Below are positions 1 to 34,347 of a stretch of DNA of 64,000 nt, in pieces. Within the stretch, counting starts at the first letter, position 1, and each line of letters begins with the position of its first letter. The DNA is taken from contig OZ076420.1 in the NCBI GenBank assembly GCA_964187785.1, forward strand, positions 44,516,001-44,580,000, written 5' to 3'. This DNA comes from Amphiscolops sp. MND2022. Its lineage: Eukaryota. The notes beneath the pieces were generated by a model that had not been told where the DNA came from, ran no database searches, and saw only the letters and a program-made list of their open reading frames with translations. The position numbers were made by a program, and so were the translations under genes.

Positions 1-420
1 TACTTTTTCTTCAGCTTCGGATTCTTTTTCGTCAGCTTCGGGTTCTTTTTCGTTAGCTTCGGGTTCTTCTTCAAAAACTTCCGGTTCTTTTACTTTTTCT
101 TCAGCTTCGGCTTCTTTTCCGTCAGCTTCGGGTTCTTCTTCAAAAACTTCCGGTTCTTTTACTTGTTCTTCAGCTTCGGGTTCTTTTTCGTCAGCTTCGG
201 GTTCTTCTTCAAAAACTTCCGGTTCTTTTACTTTTTCTTCAGCTTCGGGTTCTTTTTCGTCAGCTTCGGGTTCTTCTTCAAAAACTTCCGGTTCTTTTAC
301 TTGTTCTTCAGCTTCGGGTTCTTTTTCGTCAGCTTCGGGTTCTTCTTCAAAAACTCCGGGTTCTTTTACTTTTTCGTCAGCTTCGGGTTCTTCTTTTTCA
401 TCAGCTTCGGGTTCTTCTTC
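1..420 (-). repeat. Coding tandem repeat, 69-bp unit (EPEADEKEPEAEE[K/Q]VKEPEVFEE), about 6 copies visible, truncated by the window edge
   Basis: 69-bp periodicity of cagcttcgggttctttttcgtcagcttcgggttcttcttcaaaaacttccggttcttttact; 23-aa period in the antisense shadow ORF 163-468. Confidence 0.9.
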
Positions 421-5409: not shown

Positions 5410-5460
5410 ATTTGGTTTAGCGCGTGACTCGAACCCACGGACCTTCTATCTCAAAGTTTC
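5410..5460 (-). mobile_element. Degenerate tRNA-derived SINE head (B box only)
   Basis: Minus strand gaaggtccgtgggttcgagtcacgcgc contains a Pol III B box (GGTTCGAGTC); no complete cloverleaf. Confidence 0.35.
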
Positions 5461-13880: not shown

Positions 13881-13990
13881 GATATTGTATACGAAAAAGC
13901 GCCGAGTTAGAAAAGCAGAACTGCTTATTTGGGGAAGTGGAAGTGGGCAAATTCACATTTTTCTTCTCTTCTTCTTGATTCGGTTATCTA

Positions 13991-15095
13991 CCCAGGTTGA
14001 CCGATATGATCGGAAATGATGAACCATACGATGTCTTAGTATGGTCATGATGGAAAATGATTGTCATAGTATGATCATAGCATGGTCATATCATGAAAAG
14101 CATGCCGGTGACTATGATCATAGTATAATTGAACATGTTCGAAAATTTTCAAAAAGTCGATTATCAACTAACAGTTATTATTGGATATCGGCACGCATCC
14201 ATGAATCATTTTATCAATGTTCTCTTTTAAAACGTTGTTTCTGTTGTTTTATGGGTTACCGCAATGGCCCGGGTAGCATTAAGGACGCTTTTCATATCAT
14301 GGTCTTATCATTCTCATAATTCATCAATTCTAATATATCTAACTACAGATCTGAATGATTTTCATTGAAAGATCTCAATCGCATAGTTTCTGCAGTTTTT
14401 TAACATTTTGGGCGTTTTCTGGTTTTTGGGTGTATTTTCTTGAGTTTTTATTTCAAAAACTAGATTTTATGATCTTGTTATTTTGATAAATCATAGAATA
14501 TACTGTATCTAAATAGAGATCTGATTAGTTTTCATTAAAAGCTCCCAATCCAATTGTTTATGCAGTTTTTTTATTTTGGGTATTTTTATACTTTTTTAAG
14601 GTGTTATCCTTAATATTTCATAACAAAAACTGGATAATATGGACTTGCCTTTCTATATCTAGAAATATAATAAATTAGTCTTATTATTTTCATAATTCAT
14701 CGACTGTAGTGTATCTAAATACAGATCTGAATTGTTATCATTGATTTCAAATTGTTTTGATTTCAAATTTCTCCAATTTTGAGACCTGAAGGTGGCCACG
14801 CTCTCGTCAAGTGCGATACGGTGTACCCCACGAGCAGGAAACTTCCCTAAAAATACAACATAAGGAATTCGGCAAGCAATTTCTGTGAACAATGCGCACA
14901 AGTGACTGCCATGTCCGAGATTGTTACTACATTTGTTCTCTTGAAACATAATTTTCATACTATGTTCATACCATAAAACATGATGGTCATAGTATGATCA
15001 TACTGTGAAGCATGGTCGCTATGGTAAGATCTTGGCAAGATCATGATCATGAAATGACCATGATCATAGTATGATCATACTATGATCATAGTTTG
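13991..15095. mobile_element. Degenerate TIR-type element with ATGATCAT palindrome arrays at both ends; right terminus not found
   Basis: Starts cccaggttgacc (related to the family A terminus). (c/t)atgatcat(a/g) arrays at 14040-14130 and 14960-15095. Internal diverged 170-206-bp repeats (tatctaa-taca-gatctga at 14336, 14506, 14712). Confidence 0.5.
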
Positions 15096-15813
15096 GTGAG
15101 TATGTTCTGAAAACCTGACTCTTATAAGTGTTTATTATAAGACCAGAGACCTCACACTGAATGACGTTTTGAACTTTTTGAACAGACTTTCGTGCTAAGT
15201 TTTATCACTTCACGTACTTGTATGTTTCATTAGCAGAAGGTCTTTGGCTCGAATCCGTCACAGAACCAGGTTTTTGTTTTTCCATATTTTAACAACTGGT
15301 CTTTTATCACTCTGATGTTTTCAGTTAGGGCCCAGTTAATGTTTTATGAGCCAATAGGGTCTCCCTTTGAACTTTATTGGCACTGTGCGATTTACCAAAA
15401 TTTGTAAAACTTCTCGATGGCTAGAAAAAAGAGCAAAATAAAACGCAGCAAGTTCATACATAAATTAAGCAATTAATTTTACAATTCAAAGTATCAATTT
15501 TCATTAGCAAATTGGAAATCAGTGTATTTTTGAAAGACATTTATGACGACCATTCAATAAGAAGTCAAGAAGCACTAAAAGCAATATTGAATTGGATTTT
15601 TGATGCATCTAACAGAGAAATGAGATCGCTCAATCAATGGGCACAAAGTTGCAGGCAAAACGATAAAAAGCTAAAATGTCCACAAAATAACGTCATTCTC
15701 TCACGAAGTTTACCGGCAACTTGTTCACAGTTTCGTTCACACTTTCTCTTCAACCTGTCTTCTTTTTCTTCACGCTTGTTCAAATTGAAAGTGTTAAATT
15801 TGTTCAACAGTTT

Positions 15814-18800
15814 TTAATCTTCAACGTCTCTCGGCGAACACGTGAGTAAACTTCTCACTGCCATGACAATTGACCTGGAGCGGGATCGAGACTGAGACTG
15901 TTCAGAATACTTTTGACTGTTTTCAGATCCACCTTTTCCTTTTCGCTTTTTTTCTCGACCTCGGCCTCGTGGCAAAGTGTTGTCAATTGGCTCAGGTTCT
16001 GGTTCTATCATCACTCTTTGAGGGCTGACTTGTTGTGGTTCTTCTTTTTTCTGCTTGCTTAATGAAGGTTTCCGATCCAATAGTTTGAGCGAAGGTTTTC
16101 TGTCTAATAGTTTTATCGAGGGCTTTCGATCCAAAGGTTTGGAGCTTTCTGAATCAGTGGCTTTTGAAGGAACCGTTTCCATTTCTTCTATTTCGGCGTC
16201 ATCTGATTTGCCATTTACTACATCCAGATTATCGACTGGTTCGGGTTTGGGTGCTCTTTTAGGTTCAGGTGTAGTCATTTTGAAAACTGAAACTTTGGTG
16301 TTACGGGGCAAAGTTTTATTGGGTGAGTCTGAGATGTTAAATCGGTTCAGTTTGGGACTGGATTCGGCTTTTGTATCTTGGTCCAAATTGTGTATCCAGT
16401 TGTACTTCGGTGGGTTGAAGTAGGTCGAGGCATAGAACTCGGCTCTGTTTCTCTCTATTTGCATTCTTATACTCGAGTTGGATCTCCCGTACAAGTTAAC
16501 TGGTGATGTAGCTCGAGGTCTCGGAGGTTTCGAAGGTACTGTTTTTTCAGAAGCATTGACTTTGTCAGCAAGAATATTTCTCTGAGGGAAAATTTGCAAG
16601 TCTCGACAATAAGGTCTAGGACTCATGGCTCTGGCGAAGCTTTCAAGAACACTGTAGCTTGAAACTGATCGGACGTTAGGCCTGGCTGCTTGTTTAGTCA
16701 AGGTTCGCCCTCTGAGAGTAAAACCTTCGGTATCTGATTGCACGTAGCTAGAATCATGGGGCCTGATCCCCAAATTACTGACAGGTACGTCAGTGAAATA
16801 TGATTCCGAGTCGCTGAAAAATCCATTAGGCTGAGAACTTTTCAACATCTCATTCGACAAATCTGTTTTTGACTGGATGACACATTCGCCTTCGTCTGAT
16901 GAAACATCTCCATGGTCAGTTTTTGGTCTTTTCAGGGTCCCGTTTGCCATTGTCGAGATATCTTGAGTTGGAGTTTTCCTGTCAATTTCACTGTCGTCTT
17001 GATTTGGCGGAGACTCGTCATGATTATCATCAAGATGTAACTGATCATCAACGACAGTAGAAGTATCGGACTCAGCGTCAGTTTGCGGTCGGTTATCGTA
17101 AAACGAAGTAGCATCAGCACATATTGAAGCCACTCGAGTTTCATCTTCTGGTTTCCCTTCCTCTTCGCTAAGTGGAGACATAAGCTCTTCTGGACTACTG
17201 ACGTCTGAAAGGTCTGCGGCTAAACCGGAAGTTGAGATTTCAAGCGTGAATGAATCTGGAGATAACGTGCTTTCATCTTCAACTTTAGGAGCACTTTCAG
17301 TCTCCAGTTCTTTGGTTGGGGTACTTTCTTCATCTTGCTCCTTTTGGTTCTGATTTATGTCAATTTTCAAGGCAGTGTTCAAATCAGGAACCTTCTCAGG
17401 TTCAACTTCGTCCTCAATTTCAGCAATAATTTCTTGTTGTTCCTCTGGTTCTAAATCCTCGACATCGTCAGCTATTGAGTCATCGGTTGCTTTGGTATCC
17501 GTGGATGCAAACTCAGTCAAAAGTATTTCTTCGTTTGTTGTGGATTCCGTGATACTAGATGTCGCAATGTCGGCTGTACCTTGGGATTCTTCTTCTGGAT
17601 CTGGTGCTTCTGACACAACTCCTTGAACCTCCTCGTTAAGCTCAATTGGTGGCAAATCATCTTGTTTTTCCGACAAAACACTGTCTACAAATGCTGTTTT
17701 TTCTTTATCTTCCGACGCTGCTTTAATTTCAGCTTGTTTCACATCGGAAACTTCAACCGATGGTGCAATTACGCCCACGAGGTCAGAATCAGACTCACTG
17801 TCTGAAGCAGGAACTCTATTTTTACGCGAGTCACCAACTTTATCAAAATCTGACACTGTATCTTCCAAAGTACTGATTTCTTGTGGAATAGCATTGCTCT
17901 CTTCTGTGAAAGCTTCAAAATTGGACTCATTTTGTTGGCAAGTGAGATCATCATCACCAGACTCTGCTGCCTGTTCAGGTTCGATCTCTCGAGGTTCTTC
18001 TTCAACAACTTCTGGCTCAGCATCAACAGCAATTGTTTCAGCTTCAAGTCCTTCGTTCACAGCCTCAAAATCACCGTCTTCTTCAAATGCGTCTTTCTGA
18101 GGTTCTTCAGCCACAGTTTCTTCGGCTGGAGCTACTTCTTTACGTTCATCTGTCTGTTGTGGTGCACTTTCAGCCTCAAGTTGGTCGGCAGGAACTTCTA
18201 GCCCTTCTTCGTGAGCAGCTGCTTCACTGTCTTCTTCAGGTGCGTCTTGTTGAGGTTCTTCAGCCACAGTCTCTTCGGCTGGAGCAGCGTATTCAGGTTC
18301 ATCTGTCTGTGGTGGTGCACTTTCCGCTTCAGCTTCCTCCGTAGGAACTTCTGGCTCTTCTTCGGGAGCTGCTGTTTCACTGTCTTCTCGAGGGACTTCA
18401 GCCGCAGTCTCTTCTGCTGGAGTTGCGTCTTCAGGTTCATCTGTCTGTGGTGGCGCACTTTCTGCTTCAGCTTCCTCCGTAGGAACTTCTGGCTCTTCTT
18501 CGGGAGCTGCTGTTTCACTGTCTTCTTGAGGGACTTCAGCCGCAGTCTCTTCTGCTGGAGTTGCTTCTTCAGGTTCATCTGTCTGTGGTGGCGCACTTTC
18601 TGCTGCAGCATCGTCCGTAGGAACTTCTGGCTCTTCTTCGCGAGCTGCTGTTTCACTGTCTTCTTCAAGTCCGTCTTCTTGAGGTTCTTCAGCCACAGTA
18701 CCTTCGGCTGGAGCTGCTTCTTCTGGTTCTTCTGCCTGTGGTGGCGTTCTTTCTGCTTCAAATTCGTCGGTGGGAACTCCTTGCTCTTCTTCGGCAGCTG

Positions 18801-24800: not shown

Positions 24801-27800
24801 CTTCTTCGGGAGCTGCTGTTCCACTGTCTTCTTCAGGTGCGTCCTCTTGAGGTTCTTCAGCCACAGTCTCTTCGACTAGAGTTGCTTCTTCAGGTTCATC
24901 TGTCTGTGGTGGTGCACTTTCTGCTTCGGCTTCGTCCCTAGGAACTTCTGGCTCTTCTCCGGGTGCAGCTATTTCACTGTCTTCTTCAGGTGCGTTTTCT
25001 GGAGGTTCTTCAGCCACGGTCTCATCGGATGGAGTTGCTTCTTCAGGCTCATCTGTCTGTTGTGGTGCACTTTCTGCTTCGGCTTCGTCCCTAGGAACTT
25101 CTGGCTCTTCTCCGGGTGCAGCTGTTTCACTGTCTTCTTCAGGTGCGTTTTCTGGAGGTTCTTCAGCCACGGTCTCATCGGATGGAGTTGCTTCTTCAGG
25201 CTCATCTGTCTGTTGTGGTGCACTTTCTGCTTCAGCTTCCGCGTAAGGAACTTCTGGCTCTTCTTCGGGTGCAACTGTTTTACTGTCTTCTTCAGGTGCG
25301 TCTTTTTGAGGTTCTTCTGCCACAGTCTCTTCGGCTGGAGCTACTTCTTCAGGTTCATCTGTCGGTGGTGGTGGTGGAGCACTTTCTGCTTCGGCTTCGT
25401 CCGTAGGAACTTCTGGCTCTTCTTCGGGTGCAGCTGTTTCACTGTCTTCTTCAGGTGCATCGTCTGGACGTTCTTCAGCCACGGTCTCTTTGGTTGGAGT
25501 TGCTTCTCCAGGCTCATCTGTCCGTTGTTGTGCACTTTCTGCTTCAGCTTCCGCGGTAGGAACTTCTGGCTCTTCTTCGGGTGCAGCTGTTTCACTGTCT
25601 TCTTCAGGTGCGTCTTCTAGAGGTTCTTCAGCCACAGTCTCTTCGGCTGGAGCTGCTTCTTCAGGCTCATCAGTCTGTTGTGGTGCACTTTCTGCTTCAG
25701 CTTCGTCTGTAGGGTTTTCTGGCTCTTCTTTGGGAGCTGCTGTTTCACTGTCTTCTTCAGGTGCGTCTTCTTGGGGTTCTTCAGTCACAGTCTCCTCGGC
25801 TGGAGCTACTTGTTCCGATTCATCTGTCGGTGGTGGTGCACATTCTGCTTCAGCTCCGTCTGTAGGAACTTCTGGTTCTTCTTCGGGAGCTGCTGTTTCA
25901 CTGTCTTCTTCAGGTGCGTCTTCTAGAGGTTCTTCAGCCACAGTCTCTTCGGCTGGAGCTGCTTCTTCAGGCTCATCTGTCTCTGGTGGTGCACCTTCTG
26001 CTTCAGGTTCGTCCGTAGGAACTTCTAGCTCTTCTTCGGGAGCTGCTGTTTCACTGCTTTCTTCAGGCGCGTCTCCTTGAGATTCTTCAGCCACAGTCTC
26101 TTCGGCTGGAGCTGCTTCTTCAGGCTCATCAGTCTGTTGTGGCGCACTTTCTGCTTCAGCTTCGTCTGTAGGGTTTTCTGGCTCTTCTTCGGGAGCTGCT
26201 GTTTCACTGTCTTCTTCAGGTGCGTCTTCTTGAGATTCTTCAGCCACAGTCTCGTCGGCTGGAGCTACTTCTTCAGGTTCATCTGTCGATGGTGGTGCAC
26301 TTTCTGCTTCAGCTTCGTCTGTAGGGTTTTCTGGCTCTTCTTCGGGAGCTGCAGTTTCACTGTCTTCTTCAGGTGCGTCTTCTTGAAGTTCTTCAGCCAC
26401 AGTCTCTTCGGCTGGAGCCACTCCTTCAGGTTCTTCTGTCGGTGGTGGTGCACATTCTGCTTCAGCTTCGTCTGTAGGAACTTCTGATTTTTCTTCGGGA
26501 GCTGCTGTTTCACTGTCTTCTTCAGGTGCGTCTTCTTGAGGTCCTTCAGCCATAGTCTTTTCGGTTGGAGCTGCTTCTTCAGGTTCATTTGTCTGTGGTG
26601 GTGCACTTTCTGCTTCGGCGTTGTCCGTAGGAACTTCTGGTTCTTCTTCGGGAGCTGCTGTTTCACTGTCTTCTTCAGGTGCGTCTTCTTGAGCTTCTTC
26701 AGCCACAATCTCGTCGGCTGGAGCTACTTCTTCAGGTTGTGTTGTCGGTGGTGGTGCACTTTCTGCTTCAGCTTCGTCTGTAGGGTTTTCTGGCTCTACT
26801 TCGGGAGCTGCTGTTTCACTGTCGTCTTCAGGTGCGTCTTCTTGAGGTTCTTCAGCCACAGTCTTTTCGGTTGGAGCTGCTTCTTCATGTTCATTTGTCT
26901 GTGGTGGTGCACTTTCTGCTTCGGCTTTGTCCGTAGGAACTTCTGGTTCTTCCTCGGGAGCTGCTGTTTCACTGTCTTCTTCAGGTGCGTCTTCTTGAGC
27001 TTCTTCAGCCACAGTCTCGTCGGCTGGAGCTACTTCTTCAGGTTCTTCTGTCGGTGGTGGTGCACATTCTGCTTCAGATTCGTCTGTAGGGACTTCTGAT
27101 TTTTCTTCGGGAGCTGCTGTTTCACTGTCTTCTTCAGGTGCGTCTTCTTGAGCTTCTTCAGCCACAGTCTCGTCGGCTGGAGCTACTTCTTCAGGTTCTT
27201 CTGTCGGTGGTGGTGCACATTCTGCTTCAGCTTCATCTGTAGGAACTTCTGGTTCTTCTTCGGGAGCTGCTGTTTCACTGTCTTCTTCAGGTGCGTCTTC
27301 TTGAGCTTCTTCAGCCACAGTCTTGTCGGCTGGAGCTACTTCTTCAGGTTCTTCTGTCGGTGGTGGTGCACATTCTGCTTCAACTTCGTCTGTAGGAACT
27401 TCTGGTTCTTCTTCGGAAGCTGCTGTTTCACTGTCTTCTTCAGGTGCGTCTTCTTGAGCTTCTTCAGCCACAGTCTTGTCGGCTGGAGCTACTTCTTCAG
27501 GTTCTTCTGTCGGTGGTGGTGCACATTCTGCTTCAGCTTCGTCTGTAGGAACTTCTGGTTCTTCTTCGGAAGCTGCTGTTTCACTGTCTTCTTCAGGTGC
27601 GTCTTCTTGAGCTTCTTCAGCCACAGTCTCGTCGGCTGGAGCTACTTCTTCAGGTTCTTCTGTCGGTGGTGGTGCACATTCTGCTTCACCTTCGTCTGTA
27701 GGAACTTCTGGTTCTTCTTCGAGAGCTGCTGTTTCACTGTCTTCTTCAGGTGCGTCTTCTTGAGCTTCTTCAGCCACAGTCTCGTCGGCTGGAGCTACTT

Positions 27801-30800
27801 CTTCAGGTTCATTTGTCTGTGGTGGTGCACTTTCTGCTTCGGCTTTGGCCGTAGGAACTTCCGGTTCTTCTTCGGGAGCTGCTGTTTCACTGTCTTCTTC
27901 AGGTGCGTCTTCTTGAGCTTCTTCAGCCTCAGTCTCGTCGGCTGGAGCTACTTCTTCAGGTTCTTCTCTCGGTGGTGGTGCACATTCTGCTTCACCTTCG
28001 TCTGTAGGAATTTCTGGTTCTTCTTCGGGAGCTGCTGTTTCACTGTCTTCTTCAGGTGCGTCTTCTTGAGCTTCTTCAGCCACAGTCTCGTCGGCTGGAG
28101 CTACTTCTTCAGGTTCTTCTGTCGGTGGTGGTGCACATTCTGCTTCAGCTTCGTCTGTAGGAACTTCTGGTTCTTCTTCGGGAGCTGCTGTTTCACTGTC
28201 TTCTTCAGGTGCGTCTTCTTGAGCTTCTTCAGCCACAGTCTCGTCGGCTGGAGCTACTTCTTCAGGTTCTTCTGTCGGTGGTGGTGCACATTCCGCTTCA
28301 GCTTCGTCTGTAGGAACTTCTGGTTCTTCTTCGGGAGCTGCTGTTTCACTGTCTTCTTCAGGTGCGTCTTCTTGAGGTTCTTCAGCCACAGTCTCGTCGG
28401 CTGGAGCTACTTCTTCAGGTTCTTCTGTCGGTGGTGGTGCACTTTCTGTTTCAGCTTCGTCTGTAGGAACTTCTGGCTCTTCTTCGGGTGCAGCTGTTTC
28501 ACTGTCTTCTTCAGGTGCGTCTTCTTGAGCTTCTTCAGCCACAGTCTCGTCGGCTGGAGCTACTTCTTCAGGTTCTTCTGTCGGTGGTGGTGCACATTCT
28601 GCTTCACCTTCGTCTGTAGGAACTTCTGGTTCTTCTTCGGGAGCTGCTGTTTCACTGTCTTCTTCAGGTGCGTCTTCTTGAGCTTCTTCAGCCACAGTCT
28701 CGTCGGCTGGAGCTACTTCTTCAGGTTCTTCTGTCGGTGGTGGTGCACATTCTGCTTCAGCTTCGTCTGTAGGAACTTCTGGTTCTTCTTCGGGAGCTGC
28801 TGTTTCACTGTCTTCTTCAGGTGCGTCTTCTTGAGGTTCTTCAGCCACAGTCTTTTCGGTTGGAGCTGCTTCTTCAGGTTCATTTGTCTGTGGTGGTGCA
28901 CTTTCTGCTTCGGCTTTGGCCGTAGGAATTTCCGGTTCTTCTTCGGGAGCTGCTGTTTCACTGTCTTCTTCAGGTGCGTCTTCTTGAGCTTCTTCAGCCA
29001 CAGTCTCGTCGGCTGGAGCTACTTCTTCAGGTTCTTCTGTCGGTGGTGGTGCACTTTCTGCTTCAGCTTCGTCTGTAGGAACTTCTGGTTCTTCTTCGGG
29101 AGCTGCTGTTTCACTGTCTTCTTCAGGTATGTCTTCTTGAGCTTCTTCAGCCACAGTCTCGTCGGCTGGAGCTACTTCTTCAGGTTCTTCTGTCGGTGGT
29201 GGTGCACATTCCGCTTCAGCTTCGTCTGTAGGAACTTCTGGTTCTTCTTCGGGAGCTGCTGTTTCACTGTCTTCTTCAGGTGCGTCTTCTTGAGGTTCTT
29301 CAGCCACAGTCTCGTCGGCTGGAGCTACTTCTTCAGGTTCTTCTGTCGGTGGTGGTGCACTTTCTGCTTCAGCTTCGTCTGTAGGAACTTCTGGCTCTTC
29401 TTCGGGTGCAGCTGTTTCACTGTCTTCTTCAGGTGCGTCTCCTTGAGCTTCTTCAGCCACAGTCTCGTCGGCTGGAGCTACTTCTTCAGGTTCTTCTGTC
29501 GGTGGTGGTGCACATTCTGCTTCACCTTCGTCTGTAGGAACTTCTGGTTCTTCTTCGGGAGCTGCTGTTTCACTGTCTTCTTCAGGTGCGTCTTCTTGAG
29601 CTTCTTCAGCCACAGTCTCGTCGGCTGGAGCTACTTCTTCAGGTTCTTCTGTCGGTGGTGGTGCACATTCTGCTTCAGCTTCGTCTGTAGGAACTTCTGG
29701 TTCTTCTTCGGGAGCTGCTGTTTCACTGTCTTCTTCAGGTGCGTCTTCTTGAGGTTCTTCAGCCACAGTCTTTTCGGTTGGAGCTGCTTCTTCAGGTTCA
29801 TTTGTCTGTGGTGGTGCACTTTCTGCTTCGGCTTTGGCCGTAGGAACTTCCGGTTCTTCTTCGGGAGCTGCTGTTTCACTGTCTTCTTCAGGTGCGTCTT
29901 CTTGAGCTTCTTCAGCCACAGTCTCGTCGGCTGGAGCTACTTCTTCAGGTTCTTCTGTCGGTGGTGGTGCACTTTCTGCTTCAGCTTCGTCTGTAGGAAC
30001 TTCTGGCTCTTCTTCGGGTGCAGCTGTTTCACTGTCTTCTTCAGGTGCGTCTCCTTGAGCTTCTTCAGCCACAGTCTCGTCGGCTGGAGCTACTTCTTCA
30101 GGTTCTTCTGTCGGTGGTGGTGCACATTCTGCTTCACCTTCGTCTGTAGGAACTTCTGGTTCTTCTTCGGGAGCTGCTGTTTCACTGTCTTCTTCAGGTG
30201 CGTCTTCTTGAGCTTCTTCAGCCACAGTCTCGTCGGCTGGAGCTACTTCTTCAGGTTCTTCTGTCGGTGGTGGTGCACATTCTGCTTCAGCTTCGTCTGT
30301 AGGAACTTCTGGTTCTTCTTCGGGAGCTGCTGTTTCACTGTCTTCTTCAGGTGCGTCTTCTTGAGGTTCTTCAGCCACAGTCTTTTCGGTTGGAGCTGCT
30401 TCTTCAGGTTCATTTGTCTGTGGTGGTGCACTTTCTGCTTCGGCTTTGGCCGTAGGAACTTCCGGTTCTTCTTCGGGAGCTGCTGTTTCACTGTCTTCTT
30501 CAGGTGCGTCTTCTTGAGCTTCTTCAGCCACAGTCTCGTCGGCTGGAGCTACTTCTTCAGGTTCTTCTGTCGGTGGTGGTGCACATTCTGCTTCAGCTTC
30601 GTCTGTAGGAACTTCTGGCTCTTCTTCGGGTGCAGCTGTTTCACTGTCTTCTTCAGGTGCGTCTCCTTGAGCTTCTTCAGCCACAGTCTCGTCGGCTGGA
30701 GCTACTTCTTCAGGTTCTTCTGTCGGTGGTGGTGCATATTCTGCTTCACCTTCGTCTGTAGGAACTTCTGGTTCTTCTTCGGGAGCTGCTGTTTCACTGT

Positions 30801-33800
30801 CTTCTTCAGGTGCGTCTTCTTGAGCTTCTTCAGCCACAGTCTCGTCGGCTGGAGCTACTTCTTCAGGTTCTTCTGTCGGTGGTGGTGCACATTCTGCTTC
30901 AGCTTCGTCTGTAGGAACTTCTGGTTCTTCTTCGGGAGCTGCTGTTTCACTGTCTTCTTCAGGTGCGTCTTCTTGAGGTTCTTCAGCCACAGTCTTTTCG
31001 GTTGGAGCTGCTTCTTCAGGTTCATTTGTCTGTGGTGGTGCACTTTCTGCTTCGGCTTTGTCCGTAGGAACTTCCGGTTCTTCTTCGGGAGCTGCTGTTT
31101 CACTGTCTTCTTCAGGTGCGTCTTCTTGAGCTTCTTCAGCCACAGTCTCGTCGGCTGGAGCTACTTCTTCAGGTTCTTCTGTCGGTGGTGGTGCACTTTC
31201 TGCTTCAGCTTCGTCTGTAGGAAGTTCTGGTTCTTCTTCGGGAGCTGCTGTTTCACTGTCTTCTTCAGGTGCGTCTTCTTGAGCTTCTTCAGCCACAGTC
31301 TCGTCGGCTGGAGCTACTTCTTCAGGTTCTTCTGTCGGTGGTGGTGCACATTCTGCTTCACCTTCGTCTGTAGGAACTTCTGGTTCTTCTTCGGGAGCTG
31401 CTGTTTCACTGTCTTCTTCAGGTGCGTCTTCTTGAGCTTCTTCAGCCACAGTCTCGTCGGCTGGAGCTACTTCTTCAGGTTCTTCTGTCGGTGGTGGTGC
31501 ACATTCTGCTTCACCTTCGTCTGTAGGAACTTCTGGTTCTTCTTCGGGAGCTGCTGTTTCACTGTCTTCTTCAGGTGCGTCTTCTTGAGCTTCTTCAGCC
31601 ACAGTCTCGTCGGCTGGAGCTACTTCCTCAGGTTCTTCTGTCGGTGGTGGTGCACGTTCCGCTTCAGCTTCGTCTGTAGGAACTTCTGGTTCTTTTTCGG
31701 GAGCTGCTGTTTCACTGTCTTCTTCAGGTGCGTCTTCTTGAGGTTCTTCAGCCACAGTCTTTTCGGTTGGAGCTGCTTCTTCAGGTTCATTTGTCTGTGG
31801 TGGTGCACTTTCTGCTTCGGCTTTGGCCGTAGGAACTTCCGGTTCTTCTTCGGGAGCTGCTGTTTCACTGTCTTCTTCAGGTGCGTCTTCTTGAGCTTCT
31901 TCAGCCACAGTCTCGTCGGCTGGAGCTACTTCTTCAGGTTCTTCTCTCGGTGGTGGTGCACATTCTGCTTCAACTTCGTCTGTAGGAACTTCTGGTTCTT
32001 CTTCGGGAGCTGCTGTTTCACTGTCTTCTTCAGGTGCGTCTTCTTGAGCTTCTTCAGCCACAGTCTCGTCGGCTGGAGCTACTTCTTCAGGTTCTTCTGT
32101 CGGTGGTGGTGCACATTCCGCTTCAGCTTCGTCTGTAGGAACTTCTGGTTCTTCTTCGGGAGCTGCTGTTTCACTGTCTTCTTCAGGTGCGTCTTCTTGA
32201 GGTTCTTCAGCCACAGTCTCGTCGGCTGGAGCTACTTCTTCAGGTTCTTCTGTCGGTGGTGGTGCACATTCTGCTTCACCTTCGTCTGTAGGAACTTCTG
32301 GCTCTTCTTCGGGTGCAGCTGTTTCACTGTCTTCTTCAGGTGCGTCTCCTTGAGCTTCTTCAGCCACAGTCTCGTCGGCTGGAGCTACTTCTTCAGGTTC
32401 TTCTGTCGGTTGTGGTGCACATTCTGCTTCAGCTTCGTCTGTAGGAACTTCTGGCTCTTCTTCGGGTGCAGCTGTTTCACTGTCTTCTTCAGGTGCGTCT
32501 CCTTGAGCTTCTTCAGCCACAGTCTCGTCGGCTGGAGCTACTTCTTCAGGTTCTTCTGTCGGTGGTGGTGCACATTCTGCTTCACCTTCGTCTGTAGGAA
32601 CTTCTGGTTCTTCTTCGGGAGCTGCTGTTTCACTGTCTTCTTCAGGTGCGTCTTCTTGAGCTTCTTCAGCCACAGTCTCGTCGGCTGGAGCTACTTCTTC
32701 AGGTTCTTCTGTCGGTGGTGGTGCACATTCTGCTTCACCTTCGTCTGTAGGAACTTCTGGTTCTTCTTCGGGAGCTGCTGTTTCACTGTCTTCTTCAGGT
32801 GCGTCTTCTTGAGGTTCTTCAGCCACAGTCTCGTCGGCTGGAGCTACTTCTTCAGGTTCTTCTGTCGGTGGTGGTGCACATTCTGCTTCAGCTTCGTCTG
32901 TAGGAACTTCTGGTTCTTCTTCGGGAGCTGCTGTTTCACTGTCTTCTTCAGGTGCGTCTTCTTGAGGTTCTTCAGCCACAGTCTTTTCGGTTGGAGCTGC
33001 TTCTTCAGGTTCATTTGTCTGTGGTGGTGCACTTTCTGCTTCGGCTTTGTCCGTAGGAACTTCCGGTTCTTCTTCGGGAGCTGCTGTTTCACTGTCTTCT
33101 TCAGGTGCGTCTTCTTGAGCTTCTTCAGCCACAGTCTCGTCGGCTGGAGCTACTTCTTCAGGTTCTTCTGTCGGTGGTGGTGCACTTTCTGCTTCAGCTT
33201 CGTCTGTAGGAACTTCTGGTTCTTCTTCGGGAGCTGCTGTTTCACTGTCTTCTTCAGGTGCGTCTTCTTGAGGTTCTTCAGCCACAGTCTCGTCGGCTGG
33301 AGCTACTTCTTCAGGTTCTTCTGTCGGTGGTGGTGCACTTTTTGCTTCAGCTTCGTCTGTAGGAACTTCTGGCTCTTCTTCGGGTGCAGCTGTTTCACTC
33401 TCTTCTTGAAAACATTCCTCCGAGCTTTGATTTGACTCAGCACCCGTAAGGTTAACTTGATCTCTTTCATCTTGGTTTTCTTCTGACTTGATATGTTCCT
33501 CGGTTTCATCTTTTGTTTCCTGGTCAATCTCCGGTAGTTTGTTTTCGCATGTATCCTCTGGTTTCATATCCGAATTGGTGGCAGTTTCTGCTTCTTTAGT
33601 ATTGTCATTTGTTTCAGTTGGCAGTGCTTGTGGTTTCCCGTCTTCAGTCTGGGGGGATTCATAGCTTTTGGTTTCCATTTTGGAAGCTTCTTCTTTCAGC
33701 ACTTGTGTGATTGTTTCTTCTGATGAAACTGAAATTTGTGTAACTTGCACAGTGATGCGACTTAAATGAGTACGGTTTTGGAGAGCACTTTCCATTACTT

Positions 33801-34305
33801 CTTCCACCGTATTGTTGGCTAAACGCACTAAGCTTTCCTCTCTTTCGGAGGTGACTTTAGCACCATCACTCTGTGATCCTTCTGCCAAGCTAGTAATAGT
33901 TGGTTCAAGATCAAGCTTTTCTATGGTAGCACCATCGGTTTTTAAGGAATGACAAAGAATTTCAAAAGCACTAGTTTCGGTTTTGGTTGTATTAGTCACT
34001 TCCTCAGTGGGTGTCTTGGTTTCCGGCGATGAACGACCATCATCAGGTCGGGATCCGAAATCTTGGGTTTCTTGCAACTCAGCTACTTCAACGTTCTCAG
34101 TAGTTGCCATGATTGGTTCCAAGATCACACTTTGGTCACTGCTTTCGGATGATAATCGGTTCCGAGAATCGCTCTCGTCCTCGTGAACTGGTGAGCTACC
34201 GTTGGTTACGTAATCTGCTGGATGGTCGTAACCATTCTGAGGAGCACCATTTTCCATGACGGGTTTTTTCTTCACGGAGGAATCTGTTTCATCCGAGGGT
34301 TCCAT
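15814..34305 (-). CDS. Giant (6163 aa) highly acidic, predicted intrinsically disordered tandem-repeat protein encoded by one uninterrupted 18.5-kb ORF
   Basis: Continuous ORF with strong start context (AAACC-ATG-G) and an in-frame TAA two codons upstream. Unique N-terminal ~300 aa, about 100 51-aa repeats, and a unique ~750-aa C-terminus ending in a basic segment. AATAAA on the minus strand at 15373-15378. No signal peptide or recognisable globular domain. Confidence 0.9.
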   Translation of the reverse strand: MEPSDETDSSVKKKPVMENGAPQNGYDHPADYVTNGSSPVHEDESDSRNRLSSESSDQSVILEPIMATTENVEVAELQETQDFGSRPDDGRSSPETKTPTEEVTNTTKTETSAFEILCHSLKTDGATIEKLDLEPTITSLAEGSQSDGAKVTSEREESLVRLANNTVEEVMESALQNRTHLSRITVQVTQISVSSEETITQVLKEEASKMETKSYESPQTEDGKPQALPTETNDNTKEAETATNSDMKPEDTCENKLPEIDQETKDETEEHIKSEENQDERDQVNLTGAESNQSSEECFQEESETAAPEEEPEVPTDEAEAKSAPPPTEEPEEVAPADETVAEEPQEDAPEEDSETAAPEEEPEVPTDEAEAESAPPPTEEPEEVAPADETVAEEAQEDAPEEDSETAAPEEEPEVPTDKAEAESAPPQTNEPEEAAPTEKTVAEEPQEDAPEEDSETAAPEEEPEVPTDEAEAECAPPPTEEPEEVAPADETVAEEPQEDAPEEDSETAAPEEEPEVPTDEGEAECAPPPTEEPEEVAPADETVAEEAQEDAPEEDSETAAPEEEPEVPTDEGEAECAPPPTEEPEEVAPADETVAEEAQGDAPEEDSETAAPEEEPEVPTDEAEAECAPQPTEEPEEVAPADETVAEEAQGDAPEEDSETAAPEEEPEVPTDEGEAECAPPPTEEPEEVAPADETVAEEPQEDAPEEDSETAAPEEEPEVPTDEAEAECAPPPTEEPEEVAPADETVAEEAQEDAPEEDSETAAPEEEPEVPTDEVEAECAPPPREEPEEVAPADETVAEEAQEDAPEEDSETAAPEEEPEVPTAKAEAESAPPQTNEPEEAAPTEKTVAEEPQEDAPEEDSETAAPEKEPEVPTDEAEAERAPPPTEEPEEVAPADETVAEEAQEDAPEEDSETAAPEEEPEVPTDEGEAECAPPPTEEPEEVAPADETVAEEAQEDAPEEDSETAAPEEEPEVPTDEGEAECAPPPTEEPEEVAPADETVAEEAQEDAPEEDSETAAPEEEPELPTDEAEAESAPPPTEEPEEVAPADETVAEEAQEDAPEEDSETAAPEEEPEVPTDKAEAESAPPQTNEPEEAAPTEKTVAEEPQEDAPEEDSETAAPEEEPEVPTDEAEAECAPPPTEEPEEVAPADETVAEEAQEDAPEEDSETAAPEEEPEVPTDEGEAEYAPPPTEEPEEVAPADETVAEEAQGDAPEEDSETAAPEEEPEVPTDEAEAECAPPPTEEPEEVAPADETVAEEAQEDAPEEDSETAAPEEEPEVPTAKAEAESAPPQTNEPEEAAPTEKTVAEEPQEDAPEEDSETAAPEEEPEVPTDEAEAECAPPPTEEPEEVAPADETVAEEAQEDAPEEDSETAAPEEEPEVPTDEGEAECAPPPTEEPEEVAPADETVAEEAQGDAPEEDSETAAPEEEPEVPTDEAEAESAPPPTEEPEEVAPADETVAEEAQEDAPEEDSETAAPEEEPEVPTAKAEAESAPPQTNEPEEAAPTEKTVAEEPQEDAPEEDSETAAPEEEPEVPTDEAEAECAPPPTEEPEEVAPADETVAEEAQEDAPEEDSETAAPEEEPEVPTDEGEAECAPPPTEEPEEVAPADETVAEEAQGDAPEEDSETAAPEEEPEVPTDEAEAESAPPPTEEPEEVAPADETVAEEPQEDAPEEDSETAAPEEEPEVPTDEAEAECAPPPTEEPEEVAPADETVAEEAQEDIPEEDSETAAPEEEPEVPTDEAEAESAPPPTEEPEEVAPADETVAEEAQEDAPEEDSETAAPEEEPEIPTAKAEAESAPPQTNEPEEAAPTEKTVAEEPQEDAPEEDSETAAPEEEPEVPTDEAEAECAPPPTEEPEEVAPADETVAEEAQEDAPEEDSETAAPEEEPEVPTDEGEAECAPPPTEEPEEVAPADETVAEEAQEDAPEEDSETAAPEEEPEVPTDEAETESAPPPTEEPEEVAPADETVAEEPQEDAPEEDSETAAPEEEPEVPTDEAEAECAPPPTEEPEEVAPADETVAEEAQEDAPEEDSETAAPEEEPEVPTDEAEAECAPPPTEEPEEVAPADETVAEEAQEDAPEEDSETAAPEEEPEIPTDEGEAECAPPPREEPEEVAPADETEAEEAQEDAPEEDSETAAPEEEPEVPTAKAEAESAPPQTNEPEEVAPADETVAEEAQEDAPEEDSETAALEEEPEVPTDEGEAECAPPPTEEPEEVAPADETVAEEAQEDAPEEDSETAASEEEPEVPTDEAEAECAPPPTEEPEEVAPADKTVAEEAQEDAPEEDSETAASEEEPEVPTDEVEAECAPPPTEEPEEVAPADKTVAEEAQEDAPEEDSETAAPEEEPEVPTDEAEAECAPPPTEEPEEVAPADETVAEEAQEDAPEEDSETAAPEEKSEVPTDESEAECAPPPTEEPEEVAPADETVAEEAQEDAPEEDSETAAPEEEPEVPTDKAEAESAPPQTNEHEEAAPTEKTVAEEPQEDAPEDDSETAAPEVEPENPTDEAEAESAPPPTTQPEEVAPADEIVAEEAQEDAPEEDSETAAPEEEPEVPTDNAEAESAPPQTNEPEEAAPTEKTMAEGPQEDAPEEDSETAAPEEKSEVPTDEAEAECAPPPTEEPEGVAPAEETVAEELQEDAPEEDSETAAPEEEPENPTDEAEAESAPPSTDEPEEVAPADETVAEESQEDAPEEDSETAAPEEEPENPTDEAEAESAPQQTDEPEEAAPAEETVAEESQGDAPEESSETAAPEEELEVPTDEPEAEGAPPETDEPEEAAPAEETVAEEPLEDAPEEDSETAAPEEEPEVPTDGAEAECAPPPTDESEQVAPAEETVTEEPQEDAPEEDSETAAPKEEPENPTDEAEAESAPQQTDEPEEAAPAEETVAEEPLEDAPEEDSETAAPEEEPEVPTAEAEAESAQQRTDEPGEATPTKETVAEERPDDAPEEDSETAAPEEEPEVPTDEAEAESAPPPPPTDEPEEVAPAEETVAEEPQKDAPEEDSKTVAPEEEPEVPYAEAEAESAPQQTDEPEEATPSDETVAEEPPENAPEEDSETAAPGEEPEVPRDEAEAESAPQQTDEPEEATPSDETVAEEPPENAPEEDSEIAAPGEEPEVPRDEAEAESAPPQTDEPEEATLVEETVAEEPQEDAPEEDSGTAAPEEEPEFRTDEAEAESAPLGTDEPEEVTPVEETVAEESPEDAPEEECGTAAHEEEPEVPTDEAEAESAPLETDEPEEAAPAEGTVAGESQGDAPEESSETAAPEEDPEVPTDEVEAESAPPLTDEPEEAARAEETVAEEPQEDAPEEDSETAAPEEEPEVPTDEPEAEGAPPETDEPEEATPVEKTVAEEPQKDAPEEESGTAVPDEEPEVPTDEAEAECAPQQTNEPEEVAPADETAAEEPQEDAQEKDSETAAPEEEPEVPTDEAEGESAPPQTDEPEEATPVKETVAEEPEKDSPEEDSETAALEEEPEVPTDEPEAEGAPPKTDEPEEATPVKETVAEEPEKDSPEEDSETAALEEEPETPTDEPEAEGAPPKTDEPEEATPVEVTVAEEPAEDAPEEDSETAAPEEEPEVPTDEPEAEGAPPKTDEPEEATPVEKTVPEEPQEDAPEEDSGTAAPDEDPEVPTDEAEGESAPQQTDDPEEEAPAEETVAEEPQEDAPEEDSETVAPEEEPEVPTDEPEAEGAPPKTDEPEEATPVEETVPEEPQEDAPEKDSGTAAPDEDPEVPTDEAEGESAPQQTDEPEEATPVEVTVAEEPAEDAPEVDSETAAPEKEPEVPTDEAEGESAPQQTDEPEEEDPAEKTMAEEPQEDAPEKHSETAAPEEEPEVPTDEAEAESAPQQTDENEEAAPAEDTMAEEPQKNALEEDSGTAAPEEEPEVPTDEVEAESAPPQTDEPEEAAPAEATVAEETQEDAPEEDGETAAPEEVPDVSKDEVVTESAPPQTDEPEQAAPVEETVAKVTREDSGTAAPEEEPEVPTDEAEAESTPPQADEPGVAASAKEPVFEEPQEDAPEEDSETAAPEEEPEVSKDEVVTESAPPQTDEPEQAAPVEETVAKVTREDSETAAPEVEPKTPTDEAEAESEPPHTDEPEEAAPAKETMAEEPRKDAPEENSETAAPEEEPEVPTDEAEAESTPPQADEPGVAASAEEPVFEEPQEDAPEDDSETAAPEKEPEVSTDVAEAESAPPETDIPEEATPAEETAAEEPKENASELDSETAAPEEEPEVSTDEVEVKSAPPQTDEPEAAAPAEATVAEEPQEDAPEQDSETAAPEVEPEVSTDEAEAESEPPHTDEPEEAAPAKETMAEEPRKDAPEEDSATAASKEESIVPPGEAEAESAPPQTDEPEEAAPVEVTVAEEPQENALEENSETAAPEEEPEVPTEEAEAESAPPQTDEPEDATPAEETAAEVPREDSQTAAPKEEPEVPTDEAEAESAPLQTDEPEEVAPAEETVFEEPQEDAPEDDSETAAPEEEPEVSTDVAEVESAPPETDKPEEATPAEETAAEEPKENASELDSETAAPEEEPEVSTDEVEAESAPPQTDEPEEATPVEETVAEDTRDDSETAASKEESIVPPGEAEAESAPPQTDEPEEAAPVEVTVAEEPQENALEENSETAAPEEEPEIPTDEAEAESAPPETDEPEEATPAEESAAEEPKENAPEEDSETAAPEEEPEIPTDEAEAESAPPQTDEPEQTAPVEETVVEVTREDSETAAAEEEQEVPTDEFEAESTPPQTEEPEESAPAEETVAEEPQEHALEEDSETAVPEEVPEVPTDEFEAERTPPLAEEPEEAAPAKGTVAEEPQEDGLEEESETAAPEEEPEVPTDEVEAESAPPQTDEPEEATPVEDTEAEEPQEDAPEEDSETAAPKEEREVPTDEAEAESAPLQTDEPEEVAPAEETVFEEPQEDAPEDDSETAAPEEEPEIPTDEAEAESAPPETDKPEEATPAEETAAEEPKENAPEENSETAAPEEEPENPTDEAEAESAPPQTDEPEQAAPVEETVAEDTRDDSETAAAEEEQGVPTDEFEAERTPPQAEEPEEAAPAEGTVAEEPQEDGLEEDSETAAREEEPEVSTDVAEVESAPPGTDKPEEATPAEETAAEEPKENAPKEKSETAAPEEEPEIPTDEAEAESAPPQTDEPEQAAPVEETVAEDTRDDSETAAAEEEQGVPTDEFEAERTPPQAEEPEEAAPAEGTVAEEPQEDGLEEDSETAAREEEPEVPTDDAAAESAPPQTDEPEEATPAEETAAEVPQEDSETAAPEEEPEVPTEEAEAESAPPQTDEPEDATPAEETAAEVPREDSETAAPEEEPEVPTEEAEAESAPPQTDEPEYAAPAEETVAEEPQQDAPEEDSEAAAHEEGLEVPADQLEAESAPQQTDERKEVAPAEETVAEEPQKDAFEEDGDFEAVNEGLEAETIAVDAEPEVVEEEPREIEPEQAAESGDDDLTCQQNESNFEAFTEESNAIPQEISTLEDTVSDFDKVGDSRKNRVPASDSESDSDLVGVIAPSVEVSDVKQAEIKAASEDKEKTAFVDSVLSEKQDDLPPIELNEEVQGVVSEAPDPEEESQGTADIATSSITESTTNEEILLTEFASTDTKATDDSIADDVEDLEPEEQQEIIAEIEDEVEPEKVPDLNTALKIDINQNQKEQDEESTPTKELETESAPKVEDESTLSPDSFTLEISTSGLAADLSDVSSPEELMSPLSEEEGKPEDETRVASICADATSFYDNRPQTDAESDTSTVVDDQLHLDDNHDESPPNQDDSEIDRKTPTQDISTMANGTLKRPKTDHGDVSSDEGECVIQSKTDLSNEMLKSSQPNGFFSDSESYFTDVPVSNLGIRPHDSSYVQSDTEGFTLRGRTLTKQAARPNVRSVSSYSVLESFARAMSPRPYCRDLQIFPQRNILADKVNASEKTVPSKPPRPRATSPVNLYGRSNSSIRMQIERNRAEFYASTYFNPPKYNWIHNLDQDTKAESSPKLNRFNISDSPNKTLPRNTKVSVFKMTTPEPKRAPKPEPVDNLDVVNGKSDDAEIEEMETVPSKATDSESSKPLDRKPSIKLLDRKPSLKLLDRKPSLSKQKKEEPQQVSPQRVMIEPEPEPIDNTLPRGRGREKKRKGKGGSENSQKYSEQSQSRSRSRSIVMAVRSLLTCSPRDVED
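18075..33405 (-). repeat. Coding tandem array, 153-bp unit (EPEEVAPADETVAEEAQEDAPEEDSETAAPEEEPEVPTDEAEAECAPPPTE), about 100 units including 138-bp short variants
   Basis: Direct periodicity; near-identical shadow ORFs are spaced by multiples of 153 (612, 765, 918, 1224). Blocks of 291 (153+138) and 444 (153+153+138) bp occur in the diverged part. Confidence 0.95.
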
Positions 34306-34347
34306 GGTTTATTCAATTGGATTTTTAGGGAGACTGGAAGGCACTCC

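What the first reader, a model, noticed from the sequence alone, without database searches (positions are those of the whole stretch)
15814..34305. Undescribed-looking giant single-exon polyacidic protein (6163 aa)
Seen: 18.5 kb without a stop or intron, about 100 x 51-aa repeats dominated by E, P, A, T, D and essentially free of aromatic residues, with no signal peptide. Established: comparable low-complexity giants are elastic or spacer domains (titin PEVK-type segments), MAP1B/Futsch and neurofilament tails, or Ca-binding acidic proteins. Inference: an intracellular entropic spring/spacer or cation-buffering scaffold of very high negative charge. I recognise no specific family; this is the strongest candidate for a novel system in the window.
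Basis: partly seen in the sequence, partly recalled or inferred. Interest (0 to 1): 0.8.

Follow-up and report, generated by a model that had tools for sequence, protein, structure and literature searches.

The report
Giant polyacidic repeat protein gene
A real, transcribed gene in an invertebrate animal encodes a 6163-residue, almost wholly disordered protein of about 100 very acidic repeats ending in a short, conserved, basic tail; it matches no described family and probably acts as a tethered, negatively charged spacer, though its function is untested.

Summary
Window 15814-34305 (minus strand) is one open frame of 6163 codons with 101 tandem 153-nt (51-aa) units. The protein is 29% Glu, about 0.8% aromatic residues and has net charge -2060. 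It has no signal peptide or membrane segment.

It is a gene, not a satellite that happens to be open:
- The sense frame has 0 stops across the array. An antisense frame that is equally open in the consensus unit has 20.
- One public run behaves like RNA and covers only the last 2.5 kb of the ORF plus 234 nt of 3' UTR.
- Two unannotated relatives share the layout: an acidic array, then a basic tail (pI about 10).

The tail core is 83% identical to the nearer relative although synonymous sites are saturated. The repeats themselves have turned over. The next gene downstream is a distant tandem paralogue (1626 aa).

Pfam, PDB, the ESM Atlas and large protein searches give no named relative. AlphaFold2 finds no fold in the tail, only three short helices.

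Best reading, by inference: a tail-anchored polyanionic spacer or brush. The anchor target is unknown. Copy number is unverified and the gene probably has a 5' UTR intron.

The scan noted this stretch before (s1-188625, s1-188821), not on other DNA.

The parts
15814..34305 (-). Complete coding sequence, 6163 codons plus stop (658 kDa, net charge -2060)
34306..34347 (-). 42 nt of 5' UTR inside the giant exon. It is preceded by a polypyrimidine tract and AG acceptor (AG at 34349-34348) and holds an in-frame TAA two codons before the ATG
   Evidence: The relative has the same acceptor-then-ATG layout and so does the neighbouring paralogue
33406..34305 (-). Unique acidic N-terminal region, aa 1-300. 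It is weakly conserved: 37% identity to the relative
18071..33407 (-). Array of about 101 units of 153 nt / 51 aa. NCPR is about -0.40 and Pro 16-18%. The 5' half is nearly homogeneous; the 3' half is 81-90% identical between neighbouring units
16726..18075 (-). Unique acidic linker, aa 5411-5860, with conserved islands (SDEGEC, NGFFSD.E.YF.D)
15817..16725 (-). Conserved basic C-terminal module, aa 5861-6163, pI 10.0. This is the family-defining part
16609..16623 (-). SPRPY motif, invariant in all four family members. It follows a predicted short helix at aa 5884-5895
16417..16473 (-). Predicted helix SIRMQIERNRAEFYASTYF (aa 5945-5963). It is the only segment with pLDDT 72-85, and its RAE core is invariant
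16402..16413 (-). PPKY, a PPxY-type candidate WW-domain ligand. It is kept in the three orthologue-type proteins but not in the paralogue
   Evidence: the motif reading is inference
15928..15978 (-). TLPR plus a basic cluster (RGRGREKKRKGKGG). TLPR is invariant. The cluster is NLS-like or could bind a polyanion
   Evidence: the function is inference
15835..15891 (-). SRSRSRS followed by the C-terminal predicted helix IVMAVRSLLTCS with an invariant Cys-Ser
15580..15813 (-). 3' UTR, at least 234 nt, covered by the RNA-like contig of run X3
15422..15535 (-). Conserved non-coding block, 85% identical to the relative's 3' flank although synonymous sites are saturated. Probably part of a longer 3' UTR
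1..2085 (-). First 695 codons of the tandem paralogue. The whole ORF is 1626 aa and ends 2795 nt before the window start. It is acidic (net -382) and its C-terminal motifs are collinear with those of the giant protein

Best explanation
SHOWN. This is a genuine, transcribed, single-copy protein-coding gene of an invertebrate animal. Its coding sequence lies in one 18.5-kb exon and encodes a cytoplasmic or nuclear protein with no folded domain. The protein has a 300-aa acidic head, about 100 polyanionic 51-aa E/P/A/T repeats (about -20 charge each) and a 450-aa acidic linker. It ends in a 300-aa basic tail (pI 10) that carries short conserved motifs and three short helices. It founds a small, undescribed family: this gene, a tandem paralogue of 1626 aa, and giant relatives in two other unannotated assemblies. 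Selection preserves the open frame, the charge, the large size and, strongly, the tail. It does not preserve the repeat sequence. INFERRED. The tail is the docking module; it binds a protein partner or an anionic surface such as microtubules, actin, membrane or chromatin. The array is a highly expanded polyelectrolyte chain with a contour length of about 2 micrometres. It projects from that anchor as a repulsive brush or spacer that keeps structures apart or excludes macromolecules. This resembles MAP projection domains, neurofilament side-arms or the Ki-67 brush, but with negative charge.
For: - Gene reality: 0 stops in the sense frame against 20 in an equally open antisense frame, and all unit length changes are in frame.
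- Transcription: run X3 covers only 15580-18070, by one collinear 2700-nt contig at depth 79, and nothing on unique intergenic DNA. Three DNA runs cover everything at 35-65x.
- Single copy: the tail and the repeat occur nowhere else in the 1.07-Gb genome except the neighbouring paralogue.
- Relatives: P0001 with its locus L001/L002 has the same N-terminus, the same acceptor-ATG layout, at least 60 units of 53 aa and a 59-65% identical tail. P0002 has 4637 aa, different acidic repeats and a 44% identical tail.
- Constraint: pS is 0.69 (saturated), yet aa 5781-6020 are 83% identical with dN 0.10. The N-terminus is 37% identical.
- Repeat sequence is free but its physics is kept: pN/pS among units is about 0.8; unit charge is -19.7 +/- 2.1; NCPR is -0.40, -0.31 and -0.22 in the three species; all tails have pI about 10.
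- Disorder: mean pLDDT is 43, with only three short helices.
- Location: no signal peptide or TM.
Against: - There is no localisation, partner or phenotype data, so the anchor target and the spacer role are inference from architecture alone.
- The repeats evolve almost neutrally at the amino-acid level. That also fits an array that is merely tolerated.
- The RNA nature of X3 is inferred from its coverage pattern, not from its record. It shows only the 3' 2.7 kb, so a full-length 18.8-kb mRNA is not shown.
- The nearer relative's array has at least 5 frame changes in its assembly. These could be assembly errors or decay.
- The repeat copy number is not verified by reads.
Confidence: 0.45

Rival explanations
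1. Tail-only function. The conserved C-terminal module does the work, and the acidic array is a runaway coding minisatellite. It is tolerated because it is harmless and disordered, and it has no length- or charge-dependent role.
For: pN/pS among units is about 0.8, and synonymous versus non-synonymous variants occur in the proportions expected by chance (49:150 against 101:338 possible). Unit sequence and length differ between species, and order similarity is no better than shuffles (z = 1.0). The 5' half is being homogenised like a satellite.
Against: All three giant-type proteins and the paralogue keep a long acidic region upstream of the tail, although the repeats have been replaced. There are no stops or frameshifts in 15.3 kb, where the antisense control accumulated 20 stops. 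Unit charge stays within a narrow band.
Confidence: 0.2
2. Nuclear polyanion. The basic cluster is a nuclear localisation signal. In the nucleus the protein acts as a histone or basic-protein sink, or as a chromatin or RNP spacer, like a giant prothymosin-alpha or nucleoplasmin-type acidic tract.
For: The tail holds a conserved KKRK-type basic cluster, RGRGR and SRSRSRS. NCPR of -0.40 resembles acidic histone-binding disordered proteins (the comparison is from general knowledge).
Against: No histone-chaperone, RRM or other nuclear domain is detected. Basic S/P-rich tails are equally typical of cytoskeleton-binding proteins. A 658-kDa polyanion would need active import. No data exist.
Confidence: 0.15
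3. High-capacity cation buffer. About 2270 carboxylates would bind Ca2+, Mg2+ or polyamines with low affinity, as calsequestrin-type proteins do, but in the cytosol.
For: The Glu/Asp content is extreme, with 2269 acidic residues.
Against: There is no signal peptide or ER/SR retention signal, and known high-capacity Ca stores are lumenal (general knowledge). There is no calsequestrin or EF-hand match. A conserved docking tail is not needed for buffering.
Confidence: 0.1
4. Elastic element of muscle or another contractile structure, like the titin/sallimus PEVK and poly-E segments, tethered at both ends.
For: P/E-rich tandem repeats with no stable structure make a classical entropic spring.
Against: There are no Ig, Fn3 or kinase domains and no second conserved anchoring end; the N-terminus is poorly conserved. 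Lys is nearly absent, unlike PEVK. A spring needs two attachment points.
Confidence: 0.07

Closest known systems
MAP2 / Tau / MAP4 (projection domain plus basic binding region)
   Same: Polar layout: a long, acidic, disordered projection followed by a basic, Pro/Ser-rich C-terminal region that docks on a polymer. There is no folded domain. The projection sets spacing.
   Different: No tubulin-binding repeat (PF00418) or any other Pfam match. The projection is about 10-20 times longer, built of tandem repeats and far more acidic. The docking target is unknown.
Giant-exon neuronal scaffolds: Drosophila Ank2-XL (about 1200 kDa) and Futsch/MAP1B
   Same: Very large invertebrate proteins whose bulk comes from one huge exon with repeats; they organise axonal microtubules (PMC6703079 for Ank2-XL size and role).
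   Different: This protein stands alone with its own ATG. It has no ankyrin repeats, ZU5/death domains or MAP1 homology.
Titin / sallimus PEVK and poly-E segments
   Same: P- and E-rich, disordered, tandemly repeated modules that behave as entropic chains.
   Different: It is not embedded between Ig/Fn3 domains, Lys is 1.4% instead of abundant, and the unit is 51 aa rather than about 28 aa. Only one end is conserved.
Ki-67 (chromosome-surface 'surfactant')
   Same: A large, highly charged disordered protein with tandem repeats in a giant exon and a short C-terminal anchoring region. It works as a repulsive brush (general knowledge).
   Different: The charge sign is opposite. There is no FHA domain, PP1 site or LR domain, and no sequence similarity.
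AHNAK / periaxin
   Same: An approximately 18-kb coding exon that encodes thousands of residues of tandem repeats.
   Different: AHNAK has a PDZ domain and 128-aa repeats that are not polyacidic. No similarity was detected.

Membership tests
Tau/MAP2/MAP4 | Tubulin-binding repeats (Pfam PF00418) in the basic C-terminal region | tested here: not met
   hmmscan of the C-terminal 763 aa at E<=1 gave no family; P0001, P0002 and the paralogue also gave none
Titin / sallimus-type elastic proteins | Ig/Fn3 domains flanking the PEVK region; K-rich PPAK-type units | tested here: not met
   No Pfam domains in the termini or in 1135 aa of repeats; Lys is 1.4% in the array
Giant ankyrins | The giant exon is inserted in a gene with ANK repeats, ZU5-UPA and a death domain | tested here: not met
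   An in-frame TAA two codons upstream of the ATG and its own acceptor show that the ORF starts in this exon; no such domains are present
Calsequestrin / lumenal acidic Ca-binding proteins | Signal peptide and a thioredoxin-like calsequestrin fold, or an ER/SR targeting signal | tested here: not met
   Hydrophilic N-terminus with maximum KD19 of 0.84; no Pfam hit
Secreted mucins / acidic biomineral matrix proteins | Signal peptide; Ser/Thr-rich or Asp-rich repeats | tested here: not met
   No signal peptide; the repeats are Glu-dominated, with Ser 3.8% and Asp 7.3%
New family proposed here (acidic array plus basic SPRPY...RAE(F/Y)...TLPR...CS tail) | Collinear C-terminal motifs: SPRPY, I..(N/K)RAE(F/Y), LP(R/K)..K, TLPR plus a basic cluster, and a terminal helix ending in CS | tested here: met
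   Alignment A1 of four proteins has 45 invariant columns. BLASTP of the giant protein against the paralogue gives E = 1e-4. tblastn of the paralogue against the P0002 locus gives E = 3e-5
New family proposed here | A long, net-acidic, repeat-bearing region upstream of a basic tail | tested here: met
   NCPR is -0.40 (window), -0.31 (L002) and -0.22 (P0002), and the paralogue has net charge -382. Tail pI is 10.0, 10.1 and 8.6

The most novel reading that the evidence does not exclude
This is the founding member of an undescribed family of tail-anchored polyanionic 'brush' proteins. A short, basic, motif-rich tail docks on a cellular surface. A chain of about 5000 residues and about -2000 charge sets spacing or excludes macromolecules by electrostatic and entropic repulsion. 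Evolution conserves its physics (charge, length, disorder) rather than its sequence. It would be an anionic counterpart of Ki-67-type surfactants and MAP projection domains, and among the most highly charged polypeptides known.
Probability: 0.3. Interest if true: 0.65.

Novelty: new variant of a known kind. Interest (0 to 1): 0.42.

Why it matters
If the inference holds, this would be a clean natural test case for how cells use giant polyelectrolyte chains. The protein has no folded domain, a single strongly constrained docking tail, and a repeat array whose sequence turns over between species while charge and size persist. That makes it possible to test directly whether disordered-region function is encoded in physical properties rather than in sequence, using array-length and charge series on a defined anchor. 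It also shows that large, expressed, conserved genes remain invisible to annotation-based resources: the only relatives found are unannotated ORFs in assemblies. If it is only a tolerated coding minisatellite attached to a small motif-bearing protein, it is an ordinary lineage-specific disordered protein.

Tried and rejected
- Pfam on the N-terminus, C-terminus and 1135 aa of repeats gave only a sub-threshold DUF4703 hit (E = 0.06, 13.6 bits against a cutoff of 27), which I treat as chance. Pfam on P0001, P0002 and the paralogue gave nothing.
- A PDB profile search with A1 gave nothing.
- The ESM Atlas by features gave a best score of 0.85, below the reliable range, and no usable hit among named clusters.
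- phmmer against 1.84 billion representatives found only P0001. It missed P0002, so giant biased proteins can escape that search.
- Word-indexed searches found nothing in the 1045-3325 aa range or with the paralogue's tail.
- A JGI metagenome scan gave nothing.
- By eye the 51-aa unit and the relative's 53-aa unit looked homologous. A shuffle test rejected this (z = 1.0, 82 of 500 shuffles as good), so I claim only compositional similarity.
- I looked for the paralogue downstream of the relative's gene, out to about 28 kb, and did not find it.
- I tried to place the organism. Arthropod cuticle (PF00379), insect OR (PF02949), Arthropod_7SK and both hemocyanin families gave no hits. The tool warns that such blanks are uninformative.
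- The mitochondrial contig shows an invertebrate code, truncated tRNAs and a rearranged gene order, but does not settle the phylum.
- No RNA run is on record for this organism.
- Public contigs cannot traverse the array, so the assembly-artefact question is answered only for the unique ends.
Full report
OBSERVATION

The ORF listing gives one ORF, 15814..34305 on the minus strand, 6163 aa with an ATG start. The translation has no internal stop. Tandem Repeats Finder reports a 153-nt period, 101.1 copies, at 18071-33407, with 89% matches and 1% indels.

Splitting the protein at a unit motif gives 85 units of exactly 51 aa, 8 of 46 aa and 1 of 53 aa. Every length change is a multiple of three bases.

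Composition is E 29.2, A 15.5, P 14.9, T 8.4 and D 7.6%. F+Y+W is 0.78% overall and about 0.3% in the array. Net charge is -2060, mass 658 kDa and pI 4.05. The most hydrophobic 19-residue window scores 0.84 on the Kyte-Doolittle scale and the first 30 residues average -1.4, so there is no signal peptide or membrane span.

IS IT A GENE OR AN OPEN SATELLITE?

The consensus unit is free of stops in the sense frame and also in one antisense frame. Across the real array the sense frame has 0 stops and that antisense frame has 20. The other four frames have 76-540. This internal control shows selection for the sense frame.

Among 199 distinct single-base variants of the unit, about 9 would be expected to create stops if drawn at random; no stop exists. 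The long plus-strand ORF of 2095 aa (27148-33435) is a by-product of that open antisense frame.

The frame also continues through 300 unique codons at the 5' end and 760 at the 3' end.

GENE STRUCTURE

An in-frame TAA lies two codons upstream of the ATG. A polypyrimidine tract with AG lies 42 nt upstream of the ATG. The protein therefore starts at this ATG, and the exon probably begins at 34347 after a 5' UTR intron. The same acceptor-then-ATG arrangement is present in the relative's locus and upstream of the neighbouring paralogue. The coding sequence is single-exon; the gene probably is not.

TRANSCRIPTION AND ASSEMBLY

Four public runs from one study hold the 3' unique part. None is labelled RNA. 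I laid them on 12600-18070.
- X1, X2 and X4 cover every bin at 35-65x with at most 4 differences. They are DNA, and they confirm the assembly there.
- X3 has only 129 Mb of contigs. It covers nothing on the unique intergenic DNA (12600-13500 and 14430-15527).
- X3 covers 15580-18070 with one collinear 2700-nt contig at depth 79. That contig runs 209 nt on into the array.

A DNA library at that depth would have covered the flanks, so X3 behaves as RNA. I infer that the gene is transcribed, that the last 2.7 kb are unspliced, and that the 3' UTR is at least 234 nt. No canonical AATAAA sits at 15580, so the UTR may run further.

All contigs break 210-230 nt into the array. The copy number therefore rests on the long-read assembly alone.

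RELATIVES

The C-terminal 763 aa were run by phmmer against 1.84 billion representative proteins. They hit one protein, P0001 (842 aa, E = 4e-241, unannotated, from an ENA assembly).
- Its locus (L001/L002) has a homologous N-terminus (MDITELEPKESPSTDETDSS...).
- It has the same acceptor/ATG layout.
- It has at least 60 units of 159 nt (53 aa) plus a 46-aa unit type.
- It ends in the 59-65% identical tail.

A region-restricted search of 5.8 billion proteins found P0002 (4637 aa, ENA, unannotated). It has quite different acidic repeats and a 44% identical tail. Its called start is an internal GTG, and an acidic 312-aa ORF upstream is probably a first coding exon.

No named protein turned up:
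- Searches of the 1045-3325 aa length class and with the paralogue's tail were blank.
- Pfam, a PDB profile and the ESM Atlas were blank or below reliable scores.
- A JGI metagenome scan was blank.

A TANDEM PARALOGUE

I fetched the flanking genome. It is one ORF of 1626 aa running from 2795 nt before the window start to window position 2085. It has net charge -382 and EPEADEKEPEAEEKVKEPEVFEE-type repeats.

Its last 300 residues carry the giant protein's tail motifs in the same order: SPRPY; I..KRAEYF; LPR..K; TLPR plus basic residues; and a terminal helix ending in TCS. Three results support the relationship:
- BLASTP against the giant's tail gives E = 1e-4.
- tblastn against the P0002 locus gives E = 3e-5.
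- A profile of the four tails finds only these two genes in the 1.07-Gb genome.

The 51-aa unit occurs nowhere else in the genome. The giant acidic repeat proteins noted elsewhere in this genome by the scan are therefore different genes. I did not find the paralogue within about 28 kb downstream of the relative's gene.

WHAT IS CONSTRAINED

Between the window and P0001, synonymous sites are saturated (pS 0.69).

| Region (aa) | Identity | dN |
|---|---|---|
| 5781-6020 | 83% | 0.10 |
| 5581-5780 | 71% | 0.19 |
| 6021-6163 | 69% | 0.20 |
| 5401-5580 | 39% | 0.58 |
| N-terminal 300 | 37% | 0.63 |

Within the array, pN/pS among units is about 0.8, and synonymous and non-synonymous variants appear in chance proportions. 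The window's 51-aa consensus and the relative's 53-aa consensus are no more alike in residue order than composition-matched shuffles (z = 1.0).

What persists is physical:
- Unit charge is -19.7 +/- 2.1.
- NCPR is -0.40, -0.31 and -0.22 in the three species.
- Pro is about 15%.
- Each protein has a basic tail of pI about 10.

AlphaFold2 on the last 463 aa, using the four-sequence alignment, gives mean pLDDT 43. Only three short helices appear: aa 5884-5895, aa 5945-5963 (pLDDT 72-85) and aa 6143-6155. The tail is therefore a string of short linear motifs and helices that may fold on binding, not a domain.

MECHANISM (INFERENCE)

The protein is polar. About 5860 residues of polyanion end in a 300-residue basic, Ser/Pro-rich, motif-dense tail that is the only strongly conserved part. 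I read the tail as the docking module and the array as a projecting polyelectrolyte chain. The array's contour length is about 1.9 micrometres at 0.38 nm per residue. As an expanded coil it would span of the order of 100-200 nm; this is my estimate from polymer scaling, not a computed result. Such a chain would act as a repulsive spacer or brush.

The closest functional analogues are:
- the projection domains of MAP2/tau;
- neurofilament side-arms;
- the giant-exon scaffolds Ank2-XL and Futsch (PMC6703079 for Ank2-XL);
- the Ki-67 chromosome 'surfactant', which has the opposite charge.

Candidate tail motifs are a PPxY (PPKY), a KKRK-type basic cluster with RGRGR and SRSRSRS, and a terminal amphipathic helix with an invariant Cys. 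They are compatible with WW-domain partners, nuclear import or polyanion binding, and membrane association respectively. None of these was tested.

Rivals are listed in their own section: a tail-only function with a tolerated minisatellite, a nuclear polyanion, a cation buffer, and a muscle spring. I put about 0.9 on 'real, expressed gene of an undescribed family' and about 0.4 on the anchored-spacer mechanism.

NOVELTY

The kind of thing is known: a giant, repetitive, charged, disordered protein with a small anchoring region. The family is not, and it fails the defining features of every named family I tested. The charge density sustained over about 5000 residues, the complete lack of a folded domain and the stand-alone gene make it a new variant rather than a new category.

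Interest is moderate. It offers a good natural system for 'physics, not sequence' conservation in disordered proteins. It has no functional data, and lineage-specific giant repeat proteins are common in invertebrate genomes.

CAVEATS

- The organism is hidden. The mitochondrial contig (14,704 bp, TGA = Trp, truncated tRNAs, cox1 and cox3 on opposite strands) shows an invertebrate animal but not the phylum. Marker-family blanks are uninformative.
- The relative's array changes frame at least five times in its assembly. The tail returns to the starting frame and is under strong purifying selection, so I suspect assembly error, but I cannot show it.

Noticed in passing
window 1-2085 (-), continuing 2795 nt beyond the window start (L006:205-5085): A tandem paralogue: a single ORF of 1626 aa with net charge -382 and about 23-aa EPEADEKEPEAEEKVKEPEVFEE repeats. 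Its C-terminal motifs are collinear with the giant protein's tail, and it has its own acceptor about 24 nt upstream of the ATG.
   Followed up: yes
window 15422-15535: A 116-nt non-coding block 280-390 nt past the stop codon is 85% identical to the relative's 3' flank (L017:3298-3413), although synonymous sites between the two species are saturated. It is a candidate 3' UTR regulatory or polyadenylation element. There was no Rfam match above threshold.
   Followed up: partly
window 18071-33407: Homogenisation of the array is polarised. Neighbouring units in the 5' (N-terminal) half are 96-100% identical, with a variant unit (..AKAEAESAPPQTNEPEEAAPTEKT..) recurring every 4-8 units. Units in the 3' half are 81-90% identical and include eight 46-aa deletion variants.
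   Followed up: partly
window 27148-33435 (+): A 2095-aa antisense ORF with a TTG start. It is a by-product of the repeat unit being stop-free in one antisense frame, and that frame has 20 stops over the whole array.
   Followed up: yes
window 54014-58320 (-): A decayed Ty1/copia-type LTR retrotransposon. Its gag, zinc knuckle, pre-integrase, integrase/SH3 and RVT_2 pieces are split over at least 6 ORFs.
   Followed up: partly
window 13515-14430 and 14979-15161: Very high-copy interspersed repeat between the two genes. Summed contig depth reaches 4.7e5 in the DNA runs, there are many alternative joints, and it is also present in the RNA-like run X3.
   Followed up: no
L002 about 9960-13000 (relative's locus): The relative's repeat array changes reading frame at least 5 times within 3 kb and returns to the original frame before the conserved tail. 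This is assembly error in a metagenome-type assembly or real decay; it is unresolved.
   Followed up: partly
L007:7596-8534 and 9914-10000: In the more distant relative, the called protein P0002 starts at an internal GTG. An acidic 312-aa ORF about 1.4 kb upstream (MDVSDAATFHAENG...) looks like a separate first coding exon, so the exon structure differs between lineages.
   Followed up: partly
window 16957, 16708, 17717: Differences between individuals in the public runs. G>C at 16957 (Ile5783Met) appears in three of four runs, including the RNA-like one. 16708 is synonymous. 17717 gives Ala5530Gly.
   Followed up: partly
G000 contig C1929 (L019+L020): The mitochondrial genome is 14,704 bp with 34% GC. 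cox1 has 11 in-frame TGA codons (TGA = Trp). Many tRNAs are only 55-60 nt long. cox1 and cox3 lie on opposite strands, and an rRNA-sized gap follows cox1, so the gene order is rearranged.
   Followed up: partly
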